Shown here: positions 12,261 through 61,993 of the stretch, in pieces
Numbering within the stretch: position 1 is the first letter of the stretch
How the letters are laid out: each line of letters opens with the position of its first letter
Sequence record: NC_061449.1
Direction: 5' to 3' (one strand)
DNA length: 64,000 bases
Program-made: the position numbers and the translations under genes
Notes under the pieces: generated by a model
Told to the model about the DNA's origin: nothing
Databases searched by the model: none
What the model saw: the letters and a program-made list of their open reading frames with translations, nothing else

Positions 12261-12719
12261 TTACTTCCTCAGGTAGTCGGCCAGCATCTCGATATGATCT
12301 TTAATCATATCTTTCTGGGCGATAGTGAGTCGATTGAATGGAGGCAGATCAGGATAGATACCCTGCATAGCCAGATACGTTGTCTGAATGTTTGGTGCAG
12401 GACGTTCACCGCGAGCAAACACACAGTTCTGATAAATGTACGCTGGTGGCTGGCCGTAGAGATTATCGTCAACCAGAACACAATCGCAACCCACTAACAC
12501 AAGGTTCTTGCCTAACTTTTCTTCAACTTCTTTCATGTTGACGAGTTTGAGCACTTCATACGTTGCGTCTACAGTGCTGGTGGCAGACCCTGCGATAGAT
12601 ACGTCAAGTCGCAGGTCCAGCGTATAGGTTAAGCTAGGAGAAGCTGGTGACGTAACCATGTTGAAGCCCTCCTCCTTGAGGGCTTTGTGTAGTAGATCTT
12701 CCAGACTATTAGTTGACAT
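12261..12719 (-). CDS. Hypothetical protein
   Basis: Start overlaps the helicase stop (TAATG). Confidence 0.6.
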   Translation of the reverse strand: MSTNSLEDLLHKALKEEGFNMVTSPASPSLTYTLDLRLDVSIAGSATSTVDATYEVLKLVNMKEVEEKLGKNLVLVGCDCVLVDDNLYGQPPAYIYQNCVFARGERPAPNIQTTYLAMQGIYPDLPPFNRLTIAQKDMIKDHIEMLADYLRK

Positions 12720-14320
12720 TAGAATCGCCTCATGCCTAAGTTAGACGGCTGGCCTTTTACTTTCGCTTCCGGTTCGAAGTAGTCAGGCAGTTCGCTATCA
12801 AGCGCTTCGCCTCTCGACACAACTCCCATCCAGTCACGCAGTTTCTTCGGTGTACGCTTCGCTTTCGCGTAACCAAACTTCCAGCACATCTTGAGAACAG
12901 AACGAGCACACTGCATCGAACGATCCATCTTCGGATCAATGAACATACGAATCACAGGTGTGCGCTTGTTTTCCATCGGCGTCAGAATACGACACGATTC
13001 CTGTTTCCAGTTCGGCTCGTTGTTCATCGGCATGATGTAGTACAGCGTGTCCCACTTCGGAACGTTCAGGCCGCGCTGCATCAGCTTACGCATACCGACA
13101 ACACAACGTATCTTACCTTCACGCGCTGCATCAATAATCGGCTTACGCTTCTTCGCTTCTTTCGCACCGCCAAGGAACACAGCAGCAACTTCTTCCATGT
13201 AATGCTCATTGATTCGCTGCACCAGACGACGCGCTTGATCAGTGAACATGATTGGGATTGCGATACTTCGACCTGCATCAAGATCTTTGATAATCCATTC
13301 AAAAATCTTATCGTTGCGGTCCGGATGATTCGCAAGGAACTTACAGAATCGCACCCAACCACTTTTGTTGTTGTAGTTCGCTTTCGACTGCACTTTAGTC
13401 GAGGTCTTATGCAGCGTTACTTTCGGCACAAGCTCCTCAACAAACGCCTCGGCAATCACAGGCCCGAAGATAGATTCAATCAGGTAGTGACGTCCGTCTT
13501 TACGTTTAGGCGTTGCAGTCAGGCCGAAGCGATACTTCATTTTCAGAGAGGCAAGTACGCGGCTGTAGCAGGAGGCATTCCCGGCATGACACTCGTCCAC
13601 GAACAGCGTACCATAGTTCTCGTTCAGCAACTTGAGTCGCTTCTTCGAGTTCTTGCTGTCAGAGATCAGAGACTGATAGGTCACGAGGATAATCTGGAAG
13701 TTCTTATAGTCGTCCAAAGTCTTCGGGAATCCATACAGCTTCTTACCGTGCTTCTCTTCCAGCTCAGGGAGATTCGTCATCGCTTCGATAGTCTCTAAGA
13801 AACCGTCGAGGAAGTCTTTCTGGTCAGCCATAATGACTGTACGGAATCCAGAGTGACATGCACCAGCAGTACCGATAACTGTCTTACCAGAACGAGGCGG
13901 CGCTTTAAACACACCACACAGTTCACCGAACATCTTCTCGAACGGCTCTTCCTGATACTCACGCAGTTTGCCAGTGAACTTCACTTTGTAGTCGTAAGGT
14001 ACGCGACTCGTTCCATTCACGAACTTAACTTCTTTCAGGCTCAACCCTGCTGTCTTCTCGAAACGGTGCATCTCACCGTACGGAATAGACACGTAACGCT
14101 TACCCTTAATCTCAGAGTATTTCGCCAGCACGGTAATGTCGAGCAGACCGCCTTTGGAACACGAACGGCATTCTTCGGACGGTCGTATAGAACGAAACTC
14201 ACAGTTCTTGCACACGGCATTTTCGAACTCATAGTGAGTCATCTTCTTGATGATGTTGTCTGCGTCCACAACCTTAACTGGAATGTGCAGACGGCTATCG
14301 ACCAATACTTTGGCAGTCAC
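12719..14320 (-). CDS. uvsW: Superfamily 2 DNA helicase, UvsW-like
   Basis: Walker A 'APPRSGKT', Walker B 'LFVDECH', motif III 'LTATP', 'RGLNVPKWD', and 'L..YQ'-like Q motif 'LREYQ'. Confidence 0.8.
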   Translation of the reverse strand: MTAKVLVDSRLHIPVKVVDADNIIKKMTHYEFENAVCKNCEFRSIRPSEECRSCSKGGLLDITVLAKYSEIKGKRYVSIPYGEMHRFEKTAGLSLKEVKFVNGTSRVPYDYKVKFTGKLREYQEEPFEKMFGELCGVFKAPPRSGKTVIGTAGACHSGFRTVIMADQKDFLDGFLETIEAMTNLPELEEKHGKKLYGFPKTLDDYKNFQIILVTYQSLISDSKNSKKRLKLLNENYGTLFVDECHAGNASCYSRVLASLKMKYRFGLTATPKRKDGRHYLIESIFGPVIAEAFVEELVPKVTLHKTSTKVQSKANYNNKSGWVRFCKFLANHPDRNDKIFEWIIKDLDAGRSIAIPIMFTDQARRLVQRINEHYMEEVAAVFLGGAKEAKKRKPIIDAAREGKIRCVVGMRKLMQRGLNVPKWDTLYYIMPMNNEPNWKQESCRILTPMENKRTPVIRMFIDPKMDRSMQCARSVLKMCWKFGYAKAKRTPKKLRDWMGVVSRGEALDSELPDYFEPEAKVKGQPSNLGMRRF

Positions 14321-14322
14321 AT

Positions 14323-14868
14323 CTATTTCCTTGAGTTCGGTAGACCGTACTCACGCTGATTGATGATGTTCATCGTATCGACAAGCGCTTTAAATGCAAA
14401 GCCACACTTATCAATGTCCTTGATATAGAGATCAATCTCGTCCTTGAGTTGTTCAAGCGAATCAGCGTAGCGGTAATATTCGGCCATAATGTTTCTGACA
14501 CAGCGCTCGCGTTCTTTCGCAGCACCGACGGCTTTCAGATCTTTTGCATACGTGACCGAGGCGTAATCCTGAAACCGCTCTAACATGTCATTTAACAGTT
14601 TTGAGGCTGTGTGGATGTTAGTAAGAATCTCAGTCATACGGCTTCGGTACGATTGATCTTGAATTATCGACTCAGCCAACTTGTTCAGTGCGCTTGGGTC
14701 AGAGATGTTGAGCGTTCTGACCTTACGCATCTTGAATAGCTTACGTGCTTCGTCTTGCAGTTCGGCGAGCGGTTGCTGAAAGATAGCATTCGTTTTATAA
14801 ATGTCTCTCAGCTTCTTATAGCGCTTGTCGTTCTTGACCTTTATTCGAATGCGCTTTAGGTCGTCCAT
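14323..14868 (-). CDS. Putative UvsY-like recombination mediator
   Basis: All-helical protein. C-terminal 'IKDIDKCGFAFKALVD' resembles T4 UvsY 'LDAIKSRGFAIKHIQD'; adjacent to the UvsW-like gene, as in T4. Confidence 0.5.
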   Translation of the reverse strand: MDDLKRIRIKVKNDKRYKKLRDIYKTNAIFQQPLAELQDEARKLFKMRKVRTLNISDPSALNKLAESIIQDQSYRSRMTEILTNIHTASKLLNDMLERFQDYASVTYAKDLKAVGAAKERERCVRNIMAEYYRYADSLEQLKDEIDLYIKDIDKCGFAFKALVDTMNIINQREYGLPNSRK

Positions 14869-15302
14869 TAATCACCTTTATCAGTTACGAGAATCGGGCT
14901 GTCCGGGGTTTTGTTCGGCATAGCGAAGAAGCTGCCATGCTCGTCCCGATAAATTAGCAGACCACCGGACGGACCTTCGATAGGGCAGGTGAAGTTGAAT
15001 GTCTTTTCGAGTGGCGGCATGTAACCGACAGACACATCATTAAACGTACACCACTTCGCAGACACTTCCAGCAGCGAACCCACAACAGTATCAGCAAGAC
15101 GCAGGTACGATTGCTTGAAGTGATAGCTGTGTTCGATAGGGGCTACGCTATCAATCGTAAGTTCGTTACCGTACACAGCTTTATAAATCAGACAGAAACG
15201 ACGACGCCCGCGCGGGGCATTAGGTATTTCATACAGCACATCATGTATGAGTGAAGAAACGTCCCCGATGAGGACGTTTTTCTTGACCGCCAGCTTGATC
15301 AT
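14868..15302 (-). CDS. Hypothetical protein
   Basis: Translationally coupled on both sides. Confidence 0.55.
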   Translation of the reverse strand: MIKLAVKKNVLIGDVSSLIHDVLYEIPNAPRGRRRFCLIYKAVYGNELTIDSVAPIEHSYHFKQSYLRLADTVVGSLLEVSAKWCTFNDVSVGYMPPLEKTFNFTCPIEGPSGGLLIYRDEHGSFFAMPNKTPDSPILVTDKGD

Positions 15303-16477
15303 GCAGGCAGATACCCAAAGTACAACAACGTGTGCGTGTCGAACTTATAGTTCAGGCTGAACGCATTCAGGCTATTGATGTTCGCACCATGGAAGCCCAT
15401 GTTGTGTCGTTCTTCACGGCCGATGTTACGCAGCAACTCACGGATGATACGCATGTCCAGCGAGGTGCTAAACTCTTTCTCAACAGGCTTCGCCAGCTTC
15501 AAGCTGTCCTGTACGCTACCGCTATCGTTACCAAACTTGAGCTTGAACTCTTGCTTCTTAACGAGGAGCTTCGCGTTCGTGTTACCTTTCTTCTCGATCA
15601 ACGTCGAGATGTTAGCGAACGGAGCAGACAGGTCACCCTTAATCACACACCCAATTAGCGGCTTGCCGAGCTGTGCAATCATGTTGTCCATGTAACGATA
15701 GTCTTCATCGCTTGCCTGAATCGGAGGCAGTGTCAGAACAAACGACTCAGCTTCGGCTGCGAATGAACTGCTGTCTACGTGGAACGTTACCTTCTCTTCA
15801 CCACAGAAGCGATACACCAGATCGAACATCTCGCCGGTCATACTGAAACGGAACGGCTTCACTTTCTTTTTCAGTGCCGCACGATAACGAGAAGACGTCC
15901 AGTGACCAGGACTGACGAGGCTCAGGCTTTCACCGTCACAGATAACACGACACATCACTGTCTGGCCTGTGATTGTATCTTTCAGACGAGTCAGCTTAAC
16001 GCCCTGAGTCATCGCGTCGATAACTTCACGCGTCATCTCATGGCCGCCTTCAATGTGGTGATGCAGACCCTGTTCGACCATAGGAATCTGCTCGGCCGAT
16101 ACAGGACGCAGTTTCACTTCTGCTTTGTACTTGCCTTTCTGTTCGCTGATGTGCAACGTCTTACCGTCGAACTCAACGTTCAGTTCTTTACGCTTGCTGA
16201 TCAGGCCGGTCAACTGAATCGGGTCGATGTTCATGACCGTATCAGCATCGGCAGTTGCGCCCGGAACCAAATACGCTACGAACGTATCTGGAGTACGACC
16301 GAGAACGAACACGTCAGACTTATAGGTGACCAGCAGATGAATGTGCGTCAGCTTGTCGTCCGACTCAGAGAAACGCGTTACGCTATCAACACGTTTAAGA
16401 ATATCTGACAGGAACGTACCGTTCAGCGTTAGGCTGCATTTCTTAGCGGGGTTCTTCGGTAATCGACAAGTCTTCAT
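15299..16477 (-). CDS. dnaN: Sliding clamp, bacterial DNA Pol III beta-like
   Basis: ~390 aa, three-domain beta/alpha pattern. N-terminus 'L..ILKRV........L.HI.L.......V.V.....D' resembles DnaN; next to the DNA polymerase gene. Confidence 0.6.
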   Translation of the reverse strand: MKTCRLPKNPAKKCSLTLNGTFLSDILKRVDSVTRFSESDDKLTHIHLLVTYKSDVFVLGRTPDTFVAYLVPGATADADTVMNIDPIQLTGLISKRKELNVEFDGKTLHISEQKGKYKAEVKLRPVSAEQIPMVEQGLHHHIEGGHEMTREVIDAMTQGVKLTRLKDTITGQTVMCRVICDGESLSLVSPGHWTSSRYRAALKKKVKPFRFSMTGEMFDLVYRFCGEEKVTFHVDSSSFAAEAESFVLTLPPIQASDEDYRYMDNMIAQLGKPLIGCVIKGDLSAPFANISTLIEKKGNTNAKLLVKKQEFKLKFGNDSGSVQDSLKLAKPVEKEFSTSLDMRIIRELLRNIGREERHNMGFHGANINSLNAFSLNYKFDTHTLLYFGYLPA

Positions 16478-19939: not shown

Positions 19940-19948
19940 TATTTACAG
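19940..19948 (-). promoter_or_regulatory. CTGTAAATA motif upstream of the DNA polymerase (class 1 promoter candidate)
   Basis: The same 9-mer occurs 7-40 nt upstream of several other gene starts (see findings). Confidence 0.6.
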
Positions 19949-21574: not shown

Positions 21575-24500
21575 TTAGACTGATTTGTTTTTCGACGCGG
21601 TCAGTTTCAACTTGTCGATACCCTGAATCGCTTTCTTGATGTTCGTGATGGTGTAGCCAGCTTTCACAATCTTGTTGATTCGAGCTTTCGCACCAGCAGC
21701 GTTTTTCACGAAGCCGATCCACATACCCGGTGACAGGTCGAACGTACCGAACTTACGAGTGTTAGGCACTTTCGTTCCGACGAAGCGTTTCATCTGCGGG
21801 TTAGTTTTCAGGTCAAACATAATACGCAGACGATCTTCCATCACCATTGGATATGCCTTGACGTGTTTCTTGTCAGTGGCAGACTTGTGACGCACAAGGA
21901 AGAACTGCTGCAACTGCGACTGCAACTTGATGGCCAGCTTGTAGTTGAAGCCCATTCGAGAATGCGTTTCGTCAAAGCTATCCTGGATGAACTCCAGACG
22001 CTTCTCAGACATGCGGTCGAATGACAGTTTCTTACCTTCGATGAAGTCCAGCATTGCAACGAAGTCATCGTAGTACGCACAGTCGTAATAGACGTAATCA
22101 CCAAACTCGGTGAAGTCGAAACCTTTCAGAGCTTTCGCATCAGGGTCAGTCGCGTCAGCATACAGAGCAACGAATCCGTTGTACACTGTAGGCGTCAGCT
22201 CCAGAGCCATGTCTGCGCCGCCTTTGTCGTCAACAGGCGCGATGGTTCCAGGCTTAGCACGACGAGTAGTGTTGTCCAACACTTTCAGTTCAGACGGCTT
22301 ACGGCGACGAACTTTCTTGGCAGCTTCTTCAACACCTTCGTTGATTGGCTTACCAGTCTTTTTGTTCTCCACACGCTTGGCAACGCGAGCAGCTTTACGC
22401 GCCTGCGCTTCCACCTTCTTCTCTGTCTCTTTCGTGTCAGCAGTCTGCGTTTCGTCGAGAACGGTGTCCTCAACTTCAACACGGTTCGCTTCGGCGGTAG
22501 CGCGTTTGCGATCTTTCTCGTTCGCCCACGGCTTACGCTGTTCGAAGAAACGTTTCAGATCGTTCTTATCTACCTTGGTGGCAATGTGAACTTTCGTTGC
22601 AGGAACAGCAACGGTCTCACCAGAGCCCGCCAGACGAACACGAACGGTACTGATAGGACTGTCACCGCGCAGCTTACCATCGACCATACGAACAGTCACA
22701 GATACGACAACGCCGTTACCGAACTCAGTCACGACAGGTGCACGATTCAGAGAATCTTTCAACCCTTCACCGCTAGTGAAGTTACGGTTACGCGCCCAGT
22801 CCAGAATACGCTCAGTGCCCCAGCCGTTACGATCAGGGATCTTCTGGTTAGCAACGAGCGGAGTCTGCTCCATAACACGGAAGTCATTCAGAGCTGGAGT
22901 TGACGGCAGCGCTTGCATTGCTGCAATCGTTGTCTTACGCATCTCTTGGAACTCTTGTGACTCGATTTCGTTCAGGTCACGCTTCGCGAGGAAGTATGGA
23001 GCAAAGTCTTCCATCGTGTTATTGTCGATCAACAGCTTCGCGCTCATTTTGATCGGGTCGAGCTTGTACTGGTCGAGTGCTTCGTAACGCTGGTTGCCTT
23101 TCTCGTCAAAGCGAGTCTTCTCCAGAGTCTTCCACATCAGACGTGCAACCTTACCAACTTCCAAGGTCTTGTTCGTCATAACCCAGTCGATGAACACAAC
23201 TTCACGAGCCATGTCGCCCGGCTTACCATTCTCGTCCAACTTCGCAGCAGCAACGTCAGGACGGAAGATACGCGCAGTAGACTGATCGTAAGTACCAGGT
23301 GACCACGGAGTATCGCAGCGGATGATACGGCTACCCATCTGCATGTTGTGGCCTTCGGAGATTGCCTGTTCGTTCGCAATCAGAATCTGAACGTTGTTGT
23401 CAGTTTTGAATGCGTCGAGGTTAGCATCTTTGTTCTGGCCGAGCTTACCAACTTCACCGTGATACACCACAGCAACTTTCTTATAGTTGGCTGGCAGTGC
23501 GTTGTAGATGGCGTTTGCGGCACGAACGTAACGAGTGAAGACAATCAGCTTGCCCTGCACTTCTGGCTTCCAGTAATCCGGATCGTCCGGAGGCGGAACC
23601 ATTGAAGGCGGCAGCGCTTGACGCTTGAACTCTTCGGACTGCTTACGTGCCAGATACTTCTGACCGTTGTAGACAGCAATGTCCAGTTCACGCGGCTCTA
23701 CGCCAGGCTTCCATTCGAAGATCTGCTGCTCACCGAGCATAGGATCACGTTCAGGCTGCACTTCGAAGTGCTTCTTGATACGGTCGATGATGGTCAGTAC
23801 CTTCGCAGAAACGAAGTTCGTAACACCTGCGGCTTCAAACGTCATACGAGCAACGTCATCACCCATAGGGTCAGTCAACATCATCTCCATACGCTGGAAG
23901 TACATGTTCAGGTCAGCGTTACCCGCCAGCAGTGCGCCGAGGTCATCGCCTTCTTCGATTTCATCTTCGTCAATGTCAGACGCAGAATCACCACCATCAC
24001 CGCCACCAGCTTCGTCGTCATCGTCGTCGCCACCGCCACTTTTCTTCTTGGCGTTCTTAGCAGCTTCATCCAACTTCTCCAGCACTTCTGCGTACATTGC
24101 GTTGTACACTTCTTGGTGCAGAGCAGAGTTAGGAACTGACGGGTCATCGATCTCAACCTGAATGAAGGTATCAATCGGGTTCGGCAGCATGAACGCCCAA
24201 TGCTTACGCTTAAACGAAATGAACGCTGTATGGTTTGCCATACGTGAATGCGCACGACGAATCATTTCGATATCGTCTTTCGCGCCGTCATACGCAACGT
24301 CCAGTGAGTCACCGAACATAGCAGGCGTCATCAGTGCAGCCTGACCAACGATATCACGCACACGGTCAGTTACCAGCGTACCGGTAGCGATACGAGCATA
24401 GCGAACAGACGGAGCAGTGAAGACTGCTTTGGTGTTGAAGTGAACCTGAGAACCAGATTGACCACCAGAGAAGTTTTTCACTTTATGCGATTCATCGAGC

Positions 24501-27427
24501 AGCACGTAGCTGAACTTGAAGCGGTTAACGAACTCTACAGCACCACGCACACGAACACGCACACCGCCAATATCAACGTTGAACGTACCAGTTTGCAGAT
24601 AGCTCAGGCCGACGATGAAGATTGTGTTACGAGGCGACTGAGAGATCACATCGTACATACGTTCTTCGCCCCACGTGTTAACAGTGTCAGCAGTAATAGG
24701 CACTGCGTTCCAGCCGTTAACAATTTTGTGGAGGTCGTCACACCAGTTCGCTACGAGGTTAGACGGACAGATGATCAGAGGACGAATTGTTTCTTCACCC
24801 AGATCATCCAGCTCTTTGATAAGAGCAGCAATGTCGGTCAGACCGATAATCGTTTTACCGCCACCAGGTGCGATAAAGATTGTTGCGTAGCGCGGGCGGC
24901 GACGCAGAGTTTTATGCGCTTCGACCTGATGCGGCAGTAACGCTGCACCGTCTTTCAGACCCGGAATACGGATATCGTCAATCGTGATACCGCTATCAGG
25001 TTTCAGGCGTTCGATCTCAGTCTCAGCCGCTTCGAAAATCTCAAGAGACTTAGGAATCACATCGCTGTACATCGTAGCGAACGGCAGGATGATCTGTTGC
25101 AGACGGCCTGAGCCAGGAGCTTCTTCGGACTCGATCAGAGAACTGAACAGCTTCTTACGGTCAGCACGTACAAGCGCCTGTGACATTTCACGATACACAG
25201 CACCACCGAAGTAGTTGTTGAGTCGTGCCATATCAGACAGCTTAGACTTCTCACCCATCACGAAGTAGTGAGTGTGTGACGGCAGAGATTCGGTTGCAGC
25301 CGTAATGCTCCCCATCTCAGACAGAGAGGTTGCAATCAGGTTGGAGCCACGCAGACCGGCAGCATCGTTCAGCACACGAATCATGATACGAATCATGGTC
25401 AGTGCAGGACGCTCGTTCGACATATCAGGCACAGAGAAGTCATTAGCAATGAGATTCTCGTACAGACCGCGATCCATCGGGCTTTCTTCAAGGGACGCGT
25501 TCTCTGCATCCATGCCGATTGCTTTACGTGCGTTCTCCACCAGCGTTTTCAGGTCAGGAACCTGTTTGCTCTTGAGCATGAACTCGTAGGTCTGACACGT
25601 CTGCGCGATGATGTTCAGCAGCTCAGGCAGGTTAGAACCTTCGGTGGAGTTGTACTTGATCGTGGATTCACTCACACTCTCAATCAACTTACCATTACCG
25701 GATTCAACCTTGGCAGCTTCTACCATCGTGTCGAATGACGGGCGATACAGTGCCATGCCACCAGACGCTTGGTTGTGATAGATGTTGCCAATCACATTCG
25801 ACACAGAACGGAAGTTCGGTGCTTCACCAGGCTCTGCGAAGTCGTAGCCTAAAGCATCAGCAACGTCAAGCGAGTTCGGTGCTTTCATGCCGACAGTACG
25901 CGTTTCGTTAACTGCCAGACCGCCACCATTAGAGGTGTTTACGATCAGCGAGAAGTCAGGGTCGATGCCGATACACACGTCGCTGAAACGAGACAGAGAC
26001 TTAGCTTTCGCCTGAATGTCACGGTCGAAGTCCAGATTGTTGTTCTGGATAGCGAACATGTTGGTACGCAGCGTGTCGTGTTCAGTAGACAGCGGAACGC
26101 CTTTCTCGAACAGGTCTTCAAGCACACCGTTCAATGAGGTTTCGTAGGTCTTCACCATCTCAACGTCAATGTCTTCACGACGCGGCAGAACAGCCATCGT
26201 ACCGTTCGGCATGATAGTCATACCATTCTCGTCGGCGACCACATCGTTCACGGCGTAACCGAACTTTTCACGCAGCTTCTTCAATTCAGGCAGAGAAGTC
26301 GCAGACGTTACATAGCGCGGGATACGTGCAGCACGAGTGATACCTGTACGAGTGGAACCAGCAACGCGGAAGTAATAGCTCGCCCACCCCTGGAACCAAC
26401 GATACAGACACATGGTCTGTGTGTCAGCACCCTGAGAGATGTACTCAACCATCTCTTTCTCGAAGTTAACGATCAGACCGCCTTCAACGCGAACGTCGGT
26501 GGCCAGTGCTACTTCGTTGAAATCGACAGGAGTATCGTGACTGATCTTCATCGCCTGAATCTTACGATCAATCATCTGTTTCCCAGGGACTGAGCGAATG
26601 CCGATAGTCATGAAGTCACCAAGACCATCAACCACAGACTTATCCAGATTGCGGAACAGGTCGATATCAATGTTGTGCATTGACGGGTGAATAGAACGCA
26701 GAGCAGCGTTATACACGGACCAGTCTTTATCCAGAGGGATGCGCACCATCTTGGTATCGAATGCGTTACTGTTAGTACGCTCAACGCCGAAGATATCCTT
26801 GTACAGAGTCTTCGCTACACGGATTGCTTGCTGTGCAATGTCGGCACTGTAGGTACGCAGGTTGGCACTTTCGAAGTTGGCATCGTTATCAACGCGAGGA
26901 CGGTCGCTACCCTGATTGTTCAGAACGTTGAAGTTACCGTTCGAGGCAAGTGGGCTAGTCGGGCACGGGGTACCAGACATGATGATATCTTTACCGCCAG
27001 GGAAGCGCGTACTGTTTTCGATGATAGCACCAGAAGAGGAAGACAGGTGCTCGGCAAGAGCAGTCTTAATCTCACGGCTGAGCTTATCACCGTTCAGCAT
27101 CATGTTAATCTTGAGCGTAGCCGCATCAATGTTGTTCTTAACACGCTTAACGAAATCGTCAGGTGCAACATCCAGCATGTCCTCGAACTCTGCACCGTTA
27201 ATAACGATGTAGTTGATCAAGTCGAACGCGGCATAGATGCGAGCTACTGTTGACGCGGTGAACACTGCGAGGGCTTCGTAGTTACGACGAGACTTCCCTG
27301 TAGCGTACATCTTCGACATTTTAGCGTCGAACTCGGGCGGCAACGGACGAATAGCAAGCGCCTGATTAAACGTATCGGCGATTTGCTGAGTCGCTGTTGC
27401 TGACACACTAATCATCTGATTCATCAT
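21575..27427 (-). CDS. Giant SNF2/SF2-family helicase/translocase, 1950 aa
   Basis: Q motif 'LLPHQ', Walker A 'APGGGKT', 'LIICPSNLV.NW', 'LLDESHKVKN', 'ATGTLV', 'EGHNMQ' and 'W.P...DQ..AR'; ~800-aa uncharacterised N-terminal region. Confidence 0.85.
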   Translation of the reverse strand: MMNQMISVSATATQQIADTFNQALAIRPLPPEFDAKMSKMYATGKSRRNYEALAVFTASTVARIYAAFDLINYIVINGAEFEDMLDVAPDDFVKRVKNNIDAATLKINMMLNGDKLSREIKTALAEHLSSSSGAIIENSTRFPGGKDIIMSGTPCPTSPLASNGNFNVLNNQGSDRPRVDNDANFESANLRTYSADIAQQAIRVAKTLYKDIFGVERTNSNAFDTKMVRIPLDKDWSVYNAALRSIHPSMHNIDIDLFRNLDKSVVDGLGDFMTIGIRSVPGKQMIDRKIQAMKISHDTPVDFNEVALATDVRVEGGLIVNFEKEMVEYISQGADTQTMCLYRWFQGWASYYFRVAGSTRTGITRAARIPRYVTSATSLPELKKLREKFGYAVNDVVADENGMTIMPNGTMAVLPRREDIDVEMVKTYETSLNGVLEDLFEKGVPLSTEHDTLRTNMFAIQNNNLDFDRDIQAKAKSLSRFSDVCIGIDPDFSLIVNTSNGGGLAVNETRTVGMKAPNSLDVADALGYDFAEPGEAPNFRSVSNVIGNIYHNQASGGMALYRPSFDTMVEAAKVESGNGKLIESVSESTIKYNSTEGSNLPELLNIIAQTCQTYEFMLKSKQVPDLKTLVENARKAIGMDAENASLEESPMDRGLYENLIANDFSVPDMSNERPALTMIRIMIRVLNDAAGLRGSNLIATSLSEMGSITAATESLPSHTHYFVMGEKSKLSDMARLNNYFGGAVYREMSQALVRADRKKLFSSLIESEEAPGSGRLQQIILPFATMYSDVIPKSLEIFEAAETEIERLKPDSGITIDDIRIPGLKDGAALLPHQVEAHKTLRRRPRYATIFIAPGGGKTIIGLTDIAALIKELDDLGEETIRPLIICPSNLVANWCDDLHKIVNGWNAVPITADTVNTWGEERMYDVISQSPRNTIFIVGLSYLQTGTFNVDIGGVRVRVRGAVEFVNRFKFSYVLLDESHKVKNFSGGQSGSQVHFNTKAVFTAPSVRYARIATGTLVTDRVRDIVGQAALMTPAMFGDSLDVAYDGAKDDIEMIRRAHSRMANHTAFISFKRKHWAFMLPNPIDTFIQVEIDDPSVPNSALHQEVYNAMYAEVLEKLDEAAKNAKKKSGGGDDDDDEAGGGDGGDSASDIDEDEIEEGDDLGALLAGNADLNMYFQRMEMMLTDPMGDDVARMTFEAAGVTNFVSAKVLTIIDRIKKHFEVQPERDPMLGEQQIFEWKPGVEPRELDIAVYNGQKYLARKQSEEFKRQALPPSMVPPPDDPDYWKPEVQGKLIVFTRYVRAANAIYNALPANYKKVAVVYHGEVGKLGQNKDANLDAFKTDNNVQILIANEQAISEGHNMQMGSRIIRCDTPWSPGTYDQSTARIFRPDVAAAKLDENGKPGDMAREVVFIDWVMTNKTLEVGKVARLMWKTLEKTRFDEKGNQRYEALDQYKLDPIKMSAKLLIDNNTMEDFAPYFLAKRDLNEIESQEFQEMRKTTIAAMQALPSTPALNDFRVMEQTPLVANQKIPDRNGWGTERILDWARNRNFTSGEGLKDSLNRAPVVTEFGNGVVVSVTVRMVDGKLRGDSPISTVRVRLAGSGETVAVPATKVHIATKVDKNDLKRFFEQRKPWANEKDRKRATAEANRVEVEDTVLDETQTADTKETEKKVEAQARKAARVAKRVENKKTGKPINEGVEEAAKKVRRRKPSELKVLDNTTRRAKPGTIAPVDDKGGADMALELTPTVYNGFVALYADATDPDAKALKGFDFTEFGDYVYYDCAYYDDFVAMLDFIEGKKLSFDRMSEKRLEFIQDSFDETHSRMGFNYKLAIKLQSQLQQFFLVRHKSATDKKHVKAYPMVMEDRLRIMFDLKTNPQMKRFVGTKVPNTRKFGTFDLSPGMWIGFVKNAAGAKARINKIVKAGYTITNIKKAIQGIDKLKLTASKNKSV

Positions 27428-54835: not shown

Positions 54836-54980
54836 TTTACTTTCGCCCTATAGTTTGATGCGTTACATCAGGTATTTACAGTATTTGGACAAAAAGAAAG
54901 GACCACATCCAAAAATGGAGGGTCCTTATGGTGTTACAATAAGTTTTGGATGGTAACGCATCGGCAGTGGGCGCTGTCGA

Positions 54981-55178: not shown

Positions 55179-55271
55179 CTATTCTCCTGTGCTAAAATTT
55201 CTCGTTCTTCTGAATTATGTTTACAGTTTACTGCGAGTAGTCACACAAGAATAAAGTCAGAAAAGTCTTAA

Positions 55272-58869: not shown

Positions 58870-59340
58870 TCAATCGGGTTTTTCAAGTTGTCTGTCGATG
58901 AAGTACATCATATCATCGTCTTCATCTTCAGGGTCGTACAAGTCCAGCTTTGGAAAATTCCAAGCGACCTCTACTTCATATCGCCTTAGTGCGAACATTA
59001 TCGCTGCGTCAATTTCTCGATAAACGCATTCGAAAGGCTTTAAGTAAGGATAGGACAGGCATAAAGTTTTTACTGGCTCGGGCGGGCAAGTCTTCAACCA
59101 CGGAACTATCTCAGCGAGAGATTTCTCCAGTAGTTCTTTACTTCCGTACTTAGGCCAATCCTCAAGAAGAAGTTTCGTTATGTACTTCTTTCGATTCTTA
59201 GCGAGAGCCGCATATTCCATAGTAAGGAATTTCTCAATGCCTTTCTTCGGAACAGTTTGTTTCTTTGCGGCTAGAACGATTTCAAGTTTGACCGCGATAC
59301 GCAATCGAGCCATCTGACTGCATTTAACTTTCGGCATCAA
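58870..59340 (-). CDS. Hypothetical protein
   Basis: Start overlaps the previous stop (ATGA). Confidence 0.55.
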   Translation of the reverse strand: MMPKVKCSQMARLRIAVKLEIVLAAKKQTVPKKGIEKFLTMEYAALAKNRKKYITKLLLEDWPKYGSKELLEKSLAEIVPWLKTCPPEPVKTLCLSYPYLKPFECVYREIDAAIMFALRRYEVEVAWNFPKLDLYDPEDEDDDMMYFIDRQLEKPD

Positions 59341-60968
59341 TCGTCACCCATAAAATCAAGGGTATCAGAGAATTTCTTAATGATGAATTTCGCCTTCGCC
59401 GATTTGACGTCGCCCTTAGACTTCATTAGAGCACCGTCGTGTTCAAGCGAGTAAACGATTTCAACATTACCACTTAGAATCGCTTCAAATAAATGACTCG
59501 ACTCAATGCCAGATATGCAATGACTCATGGTTCGTCGTCGTACCTTACGGGACGAAATACATTCATCGTGCTCAAGCACATACTTGGCTCCGGTATCGCA
59601 GGTCAGCAACATACCATCAGAGGTGTAGCGGAATCGCTTGGAATAAATATCACATAGCTGCTGGAGCGCAGTAATAAAATGCTTGCAGTCTATGTTCCAC
59701 GATTCCACAAAGTCATATACCTCACTCAGATTTTTAAAGTGAGGCCTCAATGCCATGACAGCACTCGCTTTAGGACTTTTGACTAATCTGTCCGCGCTGA
59801 ACAACGTACCATAAAAACAAATCTTCACCAGCTTCTTCGATAGGCGGGTGTTATTTGGGTTAGCTTTCTGGAGCTTGTCCACAATGTCATTTACAGAATG
59901 CACATCGTCAAGGAACGGACATACAATGCCGTTGTCGGCGAACTCCTTACGGATGATATTGAGCTGGCTGCTCTCCATGTCCCAGTTATCACCGATAACA
60001 CTACACGCCTGTTTAAGAACAGCGGGGAAAGATTGGAATCCACCGCCTTGCTCAAACAGACGACCACCGACCTTAGCTATTGTGTATGCTGGGTAGTAGC
60101 GAATAATCAACGGCTCTTCGGACACAATTTGAATTGGTCCTGAGAGAATAGCCTGAAGACAACTCATTACCTGATGATATTGCTTGAGAGCTTTGCGTGT
60201 ACCTCTAAAACTCTTAACAGTCAGGTAATCAAGAATCGGGTCAATAGCAATTTCGTTTGGCCCTATCTTCTTCAACACCGCTGTATAAAGTTTACGTGCG
60301 GCCCTGTCACGATTAGATTTCAATCCGTACTTAGCTTCGCCTCCCGATAGGTCATGCTTGCGCGGCTTAAACGGTTTGTTAGCGGCAGCGCTTATCATCT
60401 CCAGAATCGTTTGTCCAAACCGCTCTTGAACCGCTTTGAGCGGACTATAGAGTCGAGTGAGTTCGAGAATCTCACGATTAGACTTCGGGCGATTGGGATA
60501 CATCGCATCCAAACACCGACGCTTAATGCGAAACTCACGACAGCGACCAGGTGACGTCGGGGTTTTCTTCTTGTACCGCTTATAATCCATAACGTTAGCG
60601 ATAAGCCATTCGAGGGCGCGACTGAAATGTTTCTCAGTCCGTTCCCACCGAGGCCCTACAGGACCTCTTAGCGTGTTTTCACAACCGAATACCATCGGAA
60701 GCTCTTTGACACCAAGTTTTCTGCTGAACGGTACCCAGACAGCACCAAATTTCTCAAATTTCTTTCTTTTTGTTGGATATATCGACGATTGCAACACATG
60801 CCAGAAGAATAGATTGATCTGACGTCGATATTCTGCCTCATGCTTTTCCGGTCCATCGTACGGGCATTTCTCAACGACGTTATCGCGTACCCACACAAGA
60901 GGTTCTAACTCCTGGTAGGTAGGGTTGCGCGTCAAGACGGCTTTGCCTTTTTTCATAAAAGAAGACAT
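59337..60968 (-). CDS. Second, divergent family A (T7-like) nucleotidyl-polymerase-fold protein lacking exonuclease
   Basis: In order: 'GGRLF....FQSFP', motif A 'NWDMESSQLNII', motif B 'KKLVKICFYGTLFS', 'SHCISGIES' and motif C 'LEHDGAL'. Probable start MSSF at 60968 (AGGAG RBS). Confidence 0.65.
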   Translation of the reverse strand: MSSFMKKGKAVLTRNPTYQELEPLVWVRDNVVEKCPYDGPEKHEAEYRRQINLFFWHVLQSSIYPTKRKKFEKFGAVWVPFSRKLGVKELPMVFGCENTLRGPVGPRWERTEKHFSRALEWLIANVMDYKRYKKKTPTSPGRCREFRIKRRCLDAMYPNRPKSNREILELTRLYSPLKAVQERFGQTILEMISAAANKPFKPRKHDLSGGEAKYGLKSNRDRAARKLYTAVLKKIGPNEIAIDPILDYLTVKSFRGTRKALKQYHQVMSCLQAILSGPIQIVSEEPLIIRYYPAYTIAKVGGRLFEQGGGFQSFPAVLKQACSVIGDNWDMESSQLNIIRKEFADNGIVCPFLDDVHSVNDIVDKLQKANPNNTRLSKKLVKICFYGTLFSADRLVKSPKASAVMALRPHFKNLSEVYDFVESWNIDCKHFITALQQLCDIYSKRFRYTSDGMLLTCDTGAKYVLEHDECISSRKVRRRTMSHCISGIESSHLFEAILSGNVEIVYSLEHDGALMKSKGDVKSAKAKFIIKKFSDTLDFMGDD

Positions 60969-61360
60969 TCGAATCTCCTGAATCACTTCTTTCGTTCATT
61001 TTCTTCTTGTTGTTTACAGAAACCTCTTGCGCTACAAGGCGATACAAGGCAGGTAGAAGAACAAGCAACGCTGGGCGATCGAGCGGCGCGCTCAAGGCAC
61101 GGGATATACACATACAGCTAGGGGCTTTAGGCGCACTCCGTTTTTGAGATAGCAAAAGGATAGAACCATGCTTATATGCGCTATAACCCATGCTCTACAT
61201 GCCCAAACATACGCGTAGGAGCGATCTCAATTTTCAAAAAGATCTCCCCGAAACCATGTAAATTTTTTTGAATTTGGGCGAGATTTCTGTCCATTTTTTA
61301 ACCAGTAGACGAAAAACAGAGGAAAACCCGAATAAAATCAAGGACTTTCCTCCAGTTTCG

Positions 61361-61993
61361 TTACTTTTTCTGCGAAACGCGCTTCCCTAACTTCACTCCA
61401 ATCTGCGTCAGAATGCGCTTAACGGTCTCTCCGTCATGCTCCGCCATAGCGTTTGCGAGCCTTTCGCCCTGTTCGCGCGATAGCTCAGGCATAATCATTT
61501 TAAGCATCTGCGAGCGCATTTTAGCAGACTTTGAGCGCCCTTTCGACGTTGAAACACCAGCCTCGTCGAGTTCCTCTGCTACGCGGCTCATGGTGCGCTG
61601 CACACGACGATCAGCGAAGATATCAGCGAATAAACTGCCGAACAACTGCTTAAAGTTGCCCTGTGCGTTAGGGAAACCTACCGTTTGTGTGCAGTGCGTA
61701 GATTCAACCTGATTCGTTGTGCGTCCACCAGCACGGAAGTTCTCGTCAGGGCGCGACGCTTTACCCTCTGCGCCCGGCTTAGTGTTGCCGTTACGCAGAT
61801 CAGCATCGCCTTCGACAGCTTTATCTGGGTCAAACATGTCGTCAGCTTTCGCGCTTTGATTTGCATCAAACGGAATCTTGCCTGTCAGCTTATTCGGGTC
61901 TGGCCAGCTATCTGGGATATCTGATGCAGGCTGAGGTTTGTTTGTCATATCACCGTTTGATGCGCCGTTCAGACTGATTTTAACGAGTGCCAT
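61361..61993 (-). CDS. Putative head/scaffold-associated protein
   Basis: AGGAG RBS; 'MALVKISLN' leader-like N-terminus; disordered middle, helical C-terminus. Confidence 0.5.
   Translation of the reverse strand: MALVKISLNGASNGDMTNKPQPASDIPDSWPDPNKLTGKIPFDANQSAKADDMFDPDKAVEGDADLRNGNTKPGAEGKASRPDENFRAGGRTTNQVESTHCTQTVGFPNAQGNFKQLFGSLFADIFADRRVQRTMSRVAEELDEAGVSTSKGRSKSAKMRSQMLKMIMPELSREQGERLANAMAEHDGETVKRILTQIGVKLGKRVSQKK

What the first reader, a model, noticed from the sequence alone, without database searches (positions are those of the whole stretch)
59337..60968. A second, unannotated PolA/T7-superfamily polymerase-like gene
The C-terminal ~250 aa carry the family A motif series in the correct order and spacing. 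These are 'GGRLF...FQSFP' (cf. TGRLSS..PNLQN), motif A 'DMESSQLNI' (cf. T7 DASGLELR), motif B 'KKLVKICFYGTLF' (cf. T7 RDNAKTFIYGFLY), 'SHCISGIES' (cf. N.L.Q) and motif C 'EHDG'. Both catalytic Asp are retained. The steric position is Tyr, versus Phe in the main PolA, and the distal Tyr is Phe. There is no exonuclease domain; the basic N-terminal half may bind DNA. Since a complete replicative PolA is already present, this may be a primase/initiator, a minimal single-subunit RNA polymerase (perhaps reading one of the non-sigma70 promoter classes) or a template-independent nucleotidyltransferase. It sits downstream of a CTGTAAACA motif and a long intergenic region.
Basis: partly seen in the sequence, partly recalled or inferred. 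Interest (0 to 1): 0.85.

Follow-up and report, generated by a model that had tools for sequence, protein, structure and literature searches.

The report
Second, minimal polymerase in jumbo phage
The gene encodes a stripped-down relative of DNA polymerase I, from the little-studied "TV-Pol" family, with its catalytic residues intact; it sits in a 2.5-kb cassette that closely related giant Erwinia phages have exchanged for very different versions, which suggests a specialised role, most likely in starting DNA synthesis, rather than bulk replication.

Summary
Observation confirmed. Window 59337-60968 (minus strand) is gp218 of Erwinia jumbo phage pEa_SNUABM_17, a 543-aa protein annotated "hypothetical".

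The polymerase reading holds:
- The AlphaFold model (pLDDT 85.6) matches only family A DNA polymerases among the top 50 PDB hits, and virophage TV-Pol proteins in the viral library.
- R303, D330, K382, G487, E489, D511 and G512 are conserved in 121-122 of 122 diverse relatives.
- Sequence models (Pfam, NCBIfam, PDB profile search) do not detect it.
- The family profile hits the Ma-LMM01 TV-Pol gene at E = 3.6e-39, and distant members lie in integrase/resolvase elements. gp218 is therefore a TV-Pol (Iyer et al. 2008), a new member of a known, biochemically almost untested kind.

Function is inferred. I favour a replication-linked primer-making or initiating polymerase. The phage also has a complete DnaG-type primase (gp227, unannotated), so gp218 is not "the missing primase". 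An RNA polymerase role is unlikely.

Unexpected finding: the upstream intergenic region, gp218 and small gp217 form a swapped cassette. Flanks are 88-92% identical in DNA while TV-Pol alleles share only 23-53% protein identity. The CTGTAAACA motif belongs to a genome-wide promoter-like class, CTGTAAA, with 63 of 65 copies co-oriented with genes.

The parts
59337..60968 (-). gp218 CDS (543 aa plus stop): TV-Pol family minimal family-A-like polymerase
   Evidence: ORF and translation. Annotated MPK72_gp218, hypothetical. AF2 pLDDT 85.6. Foldseek hits to family A polymerases and to virophage TV-Pol proteins. Family HMM links it to Ma-LMM01 gp030.
60264..60968 (-). N-terminal family-specific domain (residues 1-235), basic, fold unassigned
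   Evidence: pI 10.2. Conserved blocks FFWH and GxCREF are shared with MGE-type members. The full-length HMM scores Ma-LMM01 gp030 48 bits higher than the polymerase-domain HMM does. Foldseek on a separate model gives no significant match; the best is an HSF winged helix at E 1.1.
60144..60245 (-). Predicted thumb: two antiparallel helices (residues 242-255 and 258-275)
   Evidence: Secondary structure of the AF2 model. Corresponds to TV-Pol feature 1 in PMC2579912.
59340..60098 (-). Palm and fingers core (residues 291-543). Beta-hairpin with R303 (codon 60060-60062). Motif A D330 (59979-59981). Motif B / O-helix K382 (59823-59825), Y386, F390. SGxE at 486-489. Motif C H510-D511-G512 (D511 codon 59436-59438).
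   Evidence: Invariance. Strand/helix layout: strand 327-331 then helix 334-345; helix 378-391; helix 474-499; hairpin 502-508/512-517. Register against PolA and Pol gamma.
60969..61360 (-). 392-bp upstream intergenic region. It is part of the swapped cassette and contains no sigma-70-like promoter match and no Rfam family.
   Evidence: Sequence, promoter scan, Rfam. Not alignable between allele classes apart from the CTGTAAA box and a GCCGCCTAAAG-like box.
61011..61019 (-). CTGTAAACA promoter-like box, 43-51 nt upstream of the start codon
   Evidence: CTGTAAA is conserved at this position in all 15 related loci examined. Genome-wide, 63 of 65 CTGTAAA copies are co-oriented with genes.
61033..61050 (-). 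Direct repeat GCCTTGTA x2 with a 10-bp period. It is allele-specific: other alleles carry CTGTAGC, CCAAGC or CCTGCC repeats at the same place.
   Evidence: Short, and not tested statistically.
58870..59337 (-). gp217 (155 aa): small ORF whose start overlaps the gp218 stop by 1 nt. Candidate cognate partner that co-varies with the TV-Pol allele.
   Evidence: Only 7 close homologues exist. A 155-174 aa ORF is coupled downstream in every Alexandravirus allele class, falling into three sequence groups that follow the TV-Pol classes. Only marginal remote homology between groups (hhalign P = 0.015). No Pfam or PHROG hit.
58874..61364 (.). Swapped, hypervariable cassette: intergenic region + gp218 + gp217
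   Evidence: blastn of the window phage against L058 and L057: 88-92% identity on both flanks, with the breaks mapping to these coordinates.

Best explanation

Predicted layout:
- a basic, family-specific N-terminal domain (residues 1-235);
- a two-helix thumb (242-275);
- a beta-hairpin carrying the conserved template/primer-contacting Arg (R303);
- a palm whose two metal-binding Asp are D330 (motif A) and D511 (motif C);
- a fingers O-helix with K382, Y386 and F390.
There is no proofreading domain.

Inferred role: a template-dependent nucleotidyl transferase acting on phage DNA during replication. Most probably it makes or extends primers at particular sites (initiation or restart) rather than doing bulk synthesis, which falls to PolA gp171 with DnaB gp001, DnaG-like gp227, clamp loader gp209 and SSB gp242.

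The gene is read from a CTGTAAACA box of the same promoter-like class that precedes the other replication genes. It is exchanged among related phages as a unit with its upstream non-coding region and a translationally coupled small ORF (gp217), which suggests that these three parts work together.

Shown: fold, family membership, conservation of catalytic residues, cassette boundaries, shared promoter motif.
Inferred: catalytic activity, substrate (dNTP or rNTP), priming ability, partnership with gp217, and any action on the upstream region.
For: Fold. AF2 pLDDT 85.6, pTM 0.82. The 50 best PDB matches are all family A DNA polymerases, probability 1.0, best E = 4.8e-5. BFVD hits include TV-Pol/helicase proteins of the Zamilon and Qinghai Lake virophages as well as phage Pol I.

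Catalytic residues. R303, D330, K382, G487, E489, D511 and G512 are invariant or near-invariant in 92-122 sequences. They are retained even in the 23%-identical allele of pEa_SNUABM_16.

Family.
- 397 cluster representatives match the profile.
- Distant members sit beside an integrase and a gamma-delta resolvase in bacterial chromosomes, as described for TV-Pols in PMC2579912.
- Ma-LMM01 gp030, next to transposase genes, hits the family HMM at 3.6e-39 and the Alexandravirus-only HMM at 6e-7.
- BLASTP of MGE member P0100 against the gp218 orthologue P0001 gives 4e-8.

Replication link.
- Synteny with a RuvC-like resolvase and the clamp loader in 17 loci.
- The homologue in Vibrio phage GR11A is followed by RNase HI, with a ligase and a Rep helicase nearby.
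- The homologue on contig L007 is next to a DHH protein and a 5'-3' exonuclease.
- The CTGTAAA[T/C]A box also precedes PolA, clamp loader, DnaG-like primase, SSB and the sigma-like factor.

Precedent. CcPol-MP, an A-family polymerase plus a small protein encoded just downstream, is a primase (PMC7581432, PMC10061031).

Cassette..
Against: - No biochemical data exist for any TV-Pol that has the N-terminal domain.
- The phage encodes a complete DnaG-type primase (gp227: Zn ribbon plus Toprim) and DnaB, so a second primase is not required.
- The RxxxK motif given as a TV-Pol feature is only K..K in gp218 (K378/K382), and the -4 position is not conserved in the family.
- Sequence-level homology to classical PolA is not significant: hhalign E = 0.045, Pfam none, Pol gamma E = 1.3.
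- gp217 is not conserved outside close relatives and is absent from the Salmondvirus-type loci. Its fold was not tested.
- No D5-like or other helicase gene lies next to gp218.
- Extreme allelic divergence is unusual for a core replication enzyme and could point to a conflict-related or selfish role instead.
- That Ma-LMM01 gp030 is the ORF meant in the 2008 paper is my inference, from its position beside transposase genes and from its being the only hit in the 50 kb searched.
Confidence: 0.5

Rival explanations
1. Conflict-related or selfish cassette. The TV-Pol, its small partner and the upstream region form a semi-autonomous module whose rapid replacement reflects an arms race or competition. 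Possibilities include a target of a host defence, a counter-defence enzyme that makes a nucleic-acid product, or a specificity module that gives one phage lineage an advantage in co-infection. On this view it is not a housekeeping replication function.
For: - Sharp recombination boundaries, with flanks 88-92% identical in DNA and the cassette not alignable.
- At least six allele classes at a single locus in phages of one genus-level group, ranging from 100% down to 21-24% identity.
- Incongruence: pEa_SNUABM_22 has more distant flanks (83-88%) but a 90% TV-Pol, whereas L057 and L058 have 95-98% flanks but a 43-45% TV-Pol.
- TV-Pols elsewhere are typical cargo of mobile elements (PMC2579912).
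Against: - The gene is present at the same locus in all 53 related phage records, so it behaves as a core gene rather than an accessory one.
- No recombinase, transposase or homing endonuclease is detectable in any cassette variant.
- The catalytic residues are under strict conservation.
- This view is compatible with, rather than opposed to, a replication-initiation role.
Confidence: 0.2
2. Specialised primer-dependent DNA polymerase for repair, gap filling, translesion synthesis or recombination-dependent synthesis, with no priming activity.
For: - The closest folds are DNA polymerases that include repair enzymes such as Pol theta and Pol nu.
- There is no proofreading domain.
- A RuvC-like resolvase lies 2 kb away, and a UvsX-like recombinase is encoded elsewhere.
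- CcPol alone only extends primers.
Against: - PolA gp171 is already available for gap filling.
- This role does not explain the conserved N-terminal domain, or why the upstream region and the small ORF are swapped together with the gene.
- Repair polymerases are not usually hypervariable.
Confidence: 0.15
3. Minimal single-subunit RNA polymerase that transcribes a class of phage promoters (one of the reader's options).
For: - TV-Pols are related to T7-like RNA polymerases as well as to PolA (PMC2579912).
- No Glu sits at the D+5 position of motif A (Q335). This is a sequence-only inference about the steric gate.
- Non-sigma-70 promoter-like motifs exist in the genome.
- The review PMC7824862 states that group 3 jumbo phages lack RNA polymerase subunits.
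Against: - None of the 50 best PDB matches is an RNA polymerase.
- Pfam gives no hit at all, which includes the phage-type RNA polymerase family.
- At 543 aa there is no room for the promoter-recognition and specificity-loop elements of T7 or N4 enzymes (established knowledge).
- The phage has a sigma-like factor, gp241 (phrog_17569, 2.8e-157). The PaBG sigma factor of the same phage group, which I take to be its counterpart (not checked here), scores HHpred 99.9% to sigma-70 in PMC7412058.
- The recurrent motif CTGTAAATA looks like an extended -10 element of the T4 late type, which fits host core enzyme plus a phage sigma.
- gp218 is itself downstream of that motif.
Confidence: 0.07
4. Inactive relic or chance resemblance: a protein with a polymerase-like fold and no catalysis, or motif matches that arose by chance.
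For: No sequence model (Pfam, NCBIfam, PDB hmmsearch) recognises it.
Against: - Both Asp, the Lys, the Arg and the G.E motif are invariant across alleles that have diverged to about 20% identity.
- The fold match is confident.
Confidence: 0.03

Closest known systems
TV-Pol (transposon-virus polymerase) family, Iyer, Abhiman & Aravind 2008 (PMC2579912): the subset with the N-terminal globular domain
   Same: - Size of 400-600 aa.
- Two-helix thumb, beta-hairpin Arg, palm with two conserved Asp, fingers Lys, and no nuclease domain.
- The N-terminal domain is shared.
- Profile-level sequence match to the Ma-LMM01 member, E = 3.6e-39.
- Distant members lie with an integrase and a resolvase.
   Different: - Here it is a fixed, syntenic gene of about 260-kb jumbo myoviruses that already have PolA, DnaB and a DnaG-type primase. 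It is not cargo of a small mobile element.
- There is no neighbouring recombinase or D5-like helicase.
- The RxxxK motif is reduced to K..K.
- The locus is hypervariable and is swapped as a cassette.
CcPol-MP primase of SCCmec (Bebel et al. 2020, PMC7581432; Rice 2023, PMC10061031)
   Same: - A-family-type polymerase domain without a working exonuclease.
- A small protein is encoded immediately downstream. In CcPol-MP that protein confers ssDNA binding and de novo priming.
- Iyer et al. placed CcPol among the TV-Pols.
   Different: - CcPol is a truncated bona fide PolA close to the CHEAP subfamily (PMC10201439) and lacks the TV-Pol N-terminal domain.
- The gp218 family profile does not hit CcPol in the PDB sequence search.
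- gp217 has not been shown to be an OB fold and is not conserved in all relatives.
- No helicase gene is in the operon.
Virophage / polinton-like virus TVpol-helicase proteins (Sputnik V13, Zamilon, Qinghai Lake virophage)
   Same: Structural matches at E = 3e-5 to 5e-4 over the polymerase core.
   Different: Those proteins are fused to a C-terminal D5-like helicase and act as the sole replicase of a small genome. gp218 is a stand-alone protein in a genome with a full replisome.
Classical family A DNA polymerases (Klenow, Taq, T7 DNAP, Pol theta, apicoplast Pol)
   Same: - Fold.
- Order and spacing of the TGR-like, A, B, QG-like and C motifs. R303 to D330 to K382 to D511 is 27/52/129 residues, against roughly 37/53/124 in Klenow (Klenow numbers from memory).
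   Different: - No Pfam DNA_pol_A match.
- No 3'-5' exonuclease domain.
- Much smaller thumb and fingers.
- Motif A reads D-x-x-S-S-Q instead of D-Y-S-Q-I-E, with no Glu at D+5.
- Motif C is HDG rather than HDE.
T7-like single-subunit RNA polymerases
   Same: Same superfamily, and motif C of the H-D-(small residue) type.
   Different: Roughly 350-600 aa shorter (my recollection of T7 and N4 sizes). No promoter-binding N-terminal domain or specificity loop is identifiable. No RNA polymerase appears among the best fold matches.

Membership tests
TV-Pol family (PMC2579912) | Thumb made of two antiparallel helices, N-terminal to the palm | tested here: met
   The AF2 model has helices 242-255 and 258-275 directly before the hairpin. 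This rests on secondary structure only; the coordinates were not inspected.
TV-Pol family (PMC2579912) | [quoted passage not shown] | tested here: met
   Strands 295-297 and 304-306. R303 is conserved in 121 of 122 sequences and invariant in A2.
TV-Pol family (PMC2579912) | RRM-like palm with two conserved metal-binding Asp | tested here: met
   D330 lies at the end of strand 327-331 and D511 at the turn of hairpin 502-517. Both are 122/122.
TV-Pol family (PMC2579912) | Fingers module with an RxxxK motif (and a conserved Asp) | tested here: inconclusive
   K382 is invariant in helix 378-391. The -4 position is K378 in gp218 and is not conserved across the family. No conserved fingers Asp was identified.
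TV-Pol family (PMC2579912) | Sequence relationship to a member named in the founding paper | tested here: met
   Ma-LMM01 gp030 (NC_008562 22746-24266), beside transposase genes, scores 3.6e-39 against the A2 HMM, 1.9e-24 against the domain HMM and 6e-7 against the Alexandravirus-only HMM. That gp030 is the ORF meant in the paper is inferred.
TV-Pol family (PMC2579912) | Never fused or linked to nuclease domains; associated with a D5-like helicase, or with a resolvase, integrase or transposase | tested here: inconclusive
   gp218 has no nuclease domain. Distant members lie beside an integrase and a gamma-delta resolvase. At the phage locus itself there is no helicase or recombinase neighbour.
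Family A DNA polymerase (Pfam PF00476) | Match to the curated sequence model | tested here: not met
   Pfam gives 0 families at E <= 10. hhalign against the phage PolA clade gives E = 0.045.
Family A DNA polymerase (Pfam PF00476) | Right-hand palm/fingers/thumb fold with motifs A, B and C in order | tested here: met
   Foldseek top 50. Motif order and conservation. Motif B and QG register.
T7-like single-subunit RNA polymerase | Match to the phage-type RNA polymerase sequence model or structures; promoter-recognition elements | tested here: not met
   No Pfam hit of any kind. No RNA polymerase among the 50 best PDB matches. Promoter-recognition elements could not be assessed directly.
PolA-SSB (CcPol-MP type) primase | Small OB-fold ssDNA-binding partner encoded next to the polymerase gene, which binds the polymerase | not tested
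   gp217 is translationally coupled and co-varies with the TV-Pol allele. It is absent from the Salmondvirus-type loci.
PolA-SSB (CcPol-MP type) primase | De novo (primer-independent) synthesis | not testable with these tools
   Needs biochemistry.

The most novel reading that the evidence does not exclude
The 2.5-kb cassette is a self-contained, allele-specific initiation module. A TV-Pol uses its basic N-terminal domain, helped by its co-varying small partner, to recognise short allele-specific repeats in its own upstream region, and starts DNA or RNA-primed synthesis there. This would give each phage lineage a private origin/initiator pair, as with plasmid or lambdoid rep-ori specificity types, but with the initiator itself being a family-A-type polymerase. 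That arrangement would explain why protein, partner and non-coding DNA are always exchanged together, and why the cassette lies 3-7 kb from the gene-strand switch and the cumulative GC-skew minimum.
Probability: 0.2. Interest if true: 0.75.

Novelty: new member of a known kind. Interest (0 to 1): 0.55.

Why it matters
TV-Pols were predicted in 2008 to be ancestral-like primase-polymerases. The form that carries the N-terminal domain has never been tested biochemically.

This case offers a tractable setting. The gene sits in cultivable phages, inside an otherwise conventional replisome (PolA, DnaB, DnaG-type primase, clamp loader, SSB). Nature has also supplied a series of highly divergent alleles in near-isogenic genome backgrounds.

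That makes two questions directly testable:
- What does a minimal family A polymerase add to a complete replisome?
- Can family A polymerases initiate synthesis de novo?

It also gives a function-level annotation to a conserved "hypothetical protein" in 53 phage records (Alexandravirus, Salmondvirus and allied Erwinia, Dickeya and Yersinia jumbo phages). In addition, it points out an unannotated DnaG-type primase and a candidate promoter class in these phages, some of which are being developed as fire-blight biocontrol agents.

Tried and rejected
- **Sequence libraries.** Pfam (E <= 10) and NCBIfam give nothing for gp218. PHROGs gives only an unknown-function family.
- **PDB sequence searches.** The narrow profile finds nothing relevant. 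The broad profile finds only Pol gamma motif B at E = 1.3.
- **Direct comparison with the phage's own PolA.** BLASTP finds no similarity. hhalign gives probabilities of 0.1-1.2% (E = 0.045 at best, with the PolA clade alignment). The register is sensible for the TGR, motif B and QG motifs, but motif A is offset and motif C is not reached.
- **N-terminal domain.** The separate AF2 model has pLDDT 68.9, and Foldseek gives no significant hit, only faint winged-helix matches. No fold is assigned.
- **"Missing primase" argument.** Rejected after finding that gp227 has a DnaG Zn ribbon plus Toprim. gp027, annotated "DNA primase", is only a 122-aa Toprim piece.
- **gp217 as a universal partner.** Only 7 close homologues, no family hit, and cross-class homology is marginal.
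- **Homing endonuclease or recombinase in the cassette variants.** None found.
- **MGE neighbours versus phage neighbours.** The 165-, 452- and 467-aa MGE proteins show no similarity to the phage neighbours, and none matches the TV-Pol N-terminal domain HMM.
- **Upstream region.** No Rfam family and no sigma-70-like promoter.
- **Searches that failed or missed.** The search for related loci with the broad alignment failed for lack of a conserved stretch. tblastn of MGE member P0100 against phages did not reach Ma-LMM01; only the HMM did.
- **GC-skew minimum near the cassette.** Noted, but it is confounded with the gene-strand switch.
Full report
**What is there**

The window is record 124001-188000 of Erwinia phage pEa_SNUABM_17 (NC_061449.1), a 263,916-bp jumbo myovirus of the genus Alexandravirus that infects Erwinia amylovora. 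The finding's coordinates match CDS MPK72_gp218 on the minus strand: 543 aa, with the ATG at 60968 preceded by AGGAG, annotated "hypothetical protein".

**Is it polymerase-like?**

Sequence libraries say nothing:
- Pfam finds no family even at E <= 10, and NCBIfam finds none.
- PHROGs gives only phrog_30690, "unknown function".
- A profile search of PDB sequences finds nothing relevant.

Structure does. With an alignment of 24 orthologues, AlphaFold2 gives a confident model (pLDDT 85.6, pTM 0.82).
- Foldseek against the PDB returns 51 matches at E <= 1e-3. The 50 listed are all family A DNA polymerases: Pol theta, apicoplast Pol, Taq/Klentaq, Klenow, Bst and Pol nu. Probability is 1.0 and the best E is 4.8e-5. 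Each match covers about 270-400 alignment columns.
- In the viral library, after the orthologues from Dickeya phages JA29/JA11/JA13 and from Yoloswag, the matches are virophage "DNA replication / helicase-primase-polymerase" proteins (Zamilon, Qinghai Lake) and phage Pol I enzymes.

- two long helices (242-275) as a thumb;
- a hairpin with R303;
- strand 327-331 ending in D330, followed by a helix (motif A);
- helix 378-391 carrying K382, Y386 and F390 (motif B / O-helix);
- a long helix 474-499 carrying S486-G487-x-E489;
- a hairpin 502-517 with H510-D511-G512 at its turn (motif C).

**Conservation**

A profile search of 1.84 billion cluster representatives finds 397 relatives at E <= 1e-3 and 153 at E <= 1e-10.
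- In a 122-sequence alignment of the C-terminal domain, D330, K382, G487, E489, D511 and G512 are 122/122. R303 is 121/122, Q312 and K319 are 120/122.
- The tool alignment of 92 full-length members agrees.

Neither is met.

Sequence-level alignment to classical PolA is weak but coherent. hhalign against the phage's own PolA clade gives E = 0.045. It pairs GGR-L...GGGFQ with TGR-T...PNLQQ, K382/Y386/F390 with the K/F/Y of motif B, and the QG motif with QG. The broad profile's only other PDB hit is motif B of Pol gamma at E = 1.3.

**Which family?**

The family is the TV-Pol family of Iyer, Abhiman and Aravind (2008, PMC2579912). [quoted passage not shown] They have a two-helix thumb, a hairpin Arg, a two-Asp palm and no nuclease domain. 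They are often preceded by a family-specific N-terminal domain, and they occur in virophages, in some phages, and in bacterial elements with resolvases, integrases or IS605/IS630 transposases.

Evidence obtained here:
- Distant members found with the gp218 profile lie in bacterial contigs next to a phage-type integrase and a gamma-delta resolvase (P0100), or an integrase and a ParA-like gene (P0166). Relatives are scattered in Nostoc, Calothrix, Rhodothermales and Desulfosarcina chromosomes.
- P0100 matches the gp218 orthologue P0001 directly by BLASTP at 4e-8.
- In Microcystis phage Ma-LMM01, named in the 2008 paper as carrying a TV-Pol element, the ORF beside two transposase genes (gp030, 506 aa) is the only ORF in the 50 kb searched that hits my family HMMs. 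It scores 3.6e-39 (full length), 1.9e-24 (polymerase domain) and 6e-7 (Alexandravirus-only model). The higher full-length score shows that the N-terminal domain is shared as well.

One listed TV-Pol feature is only partly present: the RxxxK motif is K378...K382 here, and the -4 position is not conserved in the family.

I found no paper that mentions TV-Pols in jumbo phages. The genomic papers on this phage group that I could search by keyword describe PolA, clamp, clamp loader and sigma, but turned up no second polymerase.

**Genomic setting**

The phage has a conventional replication set:
- DnaB-like helicase gp001;
- PolA gp171;
- clamp loader gp209;
- SSB gp242, a UvsX-like recombinase and topoisomerase II;
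- a RuvC-like resolvase, gp221, 2 kb upstream of gp218.

The annotated "DNA primase" gp027 is only a 122-aa Toprim piece. However, gp227 (record 191580-192638, just beyond the window, annotated hypothetical) is a complete DnaG-type primase. It has a CHC2 Zn ribbon (35.1 bits) and Toprim_2 (26.8 bits), both above the Pfam cut-offs, and hits phrog_47 at 3e-24. It has the same domain set, length and relative position as the "putative DNA primase" of Dickeya phage JA11. gp218 is therefore not needed as the only primase, and I dropped that argument.

A sigma-like factor (gp241) is encoded, and the PaBG study reports a sigma-70-type factor in this phage group at HHpred 99.9%.

Elsewhere, TV-Pol homologues in phages sit among replication genes:
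- In Vibrio phage GR11A the homologue is followed by RNase HI, with a ligase and a Rep helicase nearby.
- On an 83-kb phage contig it lies next to a DHH protein and a 5'-3' exonuclease.

**The promoter-like motif**

CTGTAAACA at 61011-61019 is real, but on its own it is not significant within the window. Across the 240 kb of the genome I examined:
- CTGTAAA occurs 65 times, and 63 copies are co-oriented with the local gene strand. One of the two exceptions in fact precedes the minus-strand primase gene gp227.
- The commonest form is CTGTAAATA.
- Boxes lie 15-51 nt upstream of the starts of PolA, clamp loader, DnaG-like primase, sigma-like factor and gp160. The CTGTAAACA variant precedes gp218, SSB gp242, gp210 and four others (with the annotation tables).
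- CTGTAAA is the one element conserved 45-60 nt upstream of the TV-Pol gene in all 15 related loci examined.

This looks like a short T4-late-type promoter read by host core RNA polymerase with the phage sigma. It places gp218 in the same apparent regulon as the replication genes. It also removes the need for a phage RNA polymerase.

**The unexpected part: a swapped cassette**

In 17 related viral contigs the order resolvase, gp220, gp219, TV-Pol, then peptidase gp214 through to the clamp loader is conserved. The TV-Pol, however, is far more divergent than its neighbours. In L057, gp220 is 98%, gp214 95% and gp213 97% identical to the window phage, while gp218 is 43%.

At the DNA level, the window phage and L057 or L058 are 88-92% identical on both sides. 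The identity breaks exactly at the end of gp219 and at the end of gp217, which is window 61364 and 58874. The unit that is replaced is therefore the intergenic region, gp218 and gp217 together.

Further observations:
- tblastn across 53 phage records gives allele classes at 100-84, 53-51, 45, 44, 35 and 21-24% identity, at the same genome position in the Erwinia phage records.
- In pEa_SNUABM_16 (same genus) the allele is 23% identical, with flanks of 76-88%. It still matches the family HMM at 6e-72 and keeps R, D, K, QG.E and D.
- Relationships are incongruent. pEa_SNUABM_22 has more distant flanks (83-88%) but a 90% TV-Pol. This is recombinational exchange, not simply fast drift.
- Each Alexandravirus allele class carries its own 155-174-aa ORF coupled to the TV-Pol stop codon (overlap or a 3-nt gap). 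These small ORFs fall into three sequence groups that follow the TV-Pol classes. Only groups 1 and 3 show a hint of homology (hhalign P = 0.015). None has a family hit or an endonuclease domain.
- The upstream regions carry short, allele-specific GC-rich repeats, GCCTTGTA x2 at a 10-bp period in the window phage. I did not test these statistically.
- The cassette lies 3-7 kb from the gene-strand switch (record 187.1-187.2 kb) and from the cumulative GC-skew minimum (about 188-192 kb). Skew here follows gene orientation, so this is weak evidence.

**Interpretation**

The firm conclusion (about 0.9) is that gp218 is a TV-Pol family polymerase with an intact active site.

The role is inferred. 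I favour a replication-linked primer-making or initiating polymerase (about 0.4-0.5), for four reasons:
- This is the prediction for the family.
- Its one biochemically characterised relative in the broad sense, CcPol-MP, is a primase built from an A-family polymerase and a small protein encoded just downstream (PMC7581432, PMC10061031).
- The gene's neighbours and apparent promoter class are replication-related.
- The basic N-terminal domain, the coupled small ORF and the adjacent non-coding DNA travel together.

Rivals, in order: a conflict-driven or selfish module, a primer-dependent repair polymerase, an RNA polymerase, and an inactive relic. The hypervariability is the feature least expected of a housekeeping enzyme, and it keeps the first rival alive.

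The N-terminal domain's fold remains unassigned.

**Verdict**

The precise family is TV-Pol, so this is a new member of a known but barely characterised kind, in a new setting (a core yet hypervariable locus of a jumbo-phage lineage). Interest is moderate to good, 0.55.

Noticed in passing
whole genome of NC_061449.1; in the window e.g. 61011-61019(-), 55218-55226(-), 19940-19948(-) upstream of PolA gp171, 54873-54881(-) upstream of clamp loader gp209: CTGTAAA (mostly CTGTAAATA) is a strongly strand-biased motif: 63 of 65 copies are co-oriented with genes. It lies typically 30-50 nt upstream of start codons, including those of PolA, clamp loader, DnaG-like primase, the sigma-like factor and SSB. 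It is a candidate phage promoter class resembling the T4 late TATAAATA element..
   Followed up: partly
outside the window: NC_061449.1 191580-192638 (minus strand), gp227; locus L005:3580-4638: Annotated 'hypothetical protein', but it is a complete DnaG-type primase, with a CHC2 Zn ribbon and Toprim both above the Pfam cut-offs and phrog_47 at 3e-24. It has the same domains, length and relative position as the JA11 'putative DNA primase'..
   Followed up: yes
outside the window: NC_061449.1 19522-19890, gp027: The protein annotated 'DNA primase' is only 122 aa and matches just the Toprim portion of primase profiles, so it is a stand-alone Toprim piece.
   Followed up: partly
window 58874-61364 versus loci L057, L058, L051, L064: Sharp recombination boundaries. 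Flanks are 88-92% identical in DNA, while the intergenic region, TV-Pol and small ORF are not alignable. At least six TV-Pol allele classes occupy the same locus in related phages.
   Followed up: yes
window 61033-61050(-), and the equivalent upstream regions of L049-L063: Short, allele-specific GC-rich direct repeats lie 60-170 nt upstream of each TV-Pol allele: GCCTTGTA, CTGTAGC, CCAAGC or CCTGCC. A conserved GCCGCCTAAAG-like box lies further upstream. Significance was not tested.
   Followed up: partly
window 12719-14320(-) gp166 and 21575-27427(-) gp174: gp166, annotated hypothetical, has ResIII and Helicase_C domains (SF2 helicase). gp174 is a 1950-aa protein with an SNF2-type helicase core in its middle and large unassigned N- and C-terminal regions.
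   Followed up: no
window 10025-10645(-) gp160: Annotated 'DNA polymerase' but only 206 aa, with no Pfam match at E <= 0.01. It is preceded by a CTGTAAATA box. Its identity was not checked.
   Followed up: no
record ~188-192 kb (window end) and ~50 kb: The cumulative GC-skew minimum and maximum coincide with the two gene-strand switch points. The minimum is 3-7 kb from the TV-Pol cassette, the resolvase and the DnaG-like primase. It could mark an origin, but it is confounded with transcription direction.
   Followed up: partly
locus L065 (Dickeya phage JA11, NC_048077.1) 14001-15635: The JA11 TV-Pol orthologue is annotated from an internal start (405 aa), although the tblastn match and the intact 548-aa ORF in the IMG/VR copy begin about 420 nt upstream. 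The BFVD entries for JA11 (405 aa) and JA13 (284 aa) are likewise truncated.
   Followed up: partly
locus L046 (Vibrio phage vB_VcorM_GR11A) 8200-10969: A 617-aa TV-Pol homologue in an unrelated 195-kb Vibrio phage is followed by RNase HI and also sits after a roughly 1.1-kb gene-free stretch.
   Followed up: no
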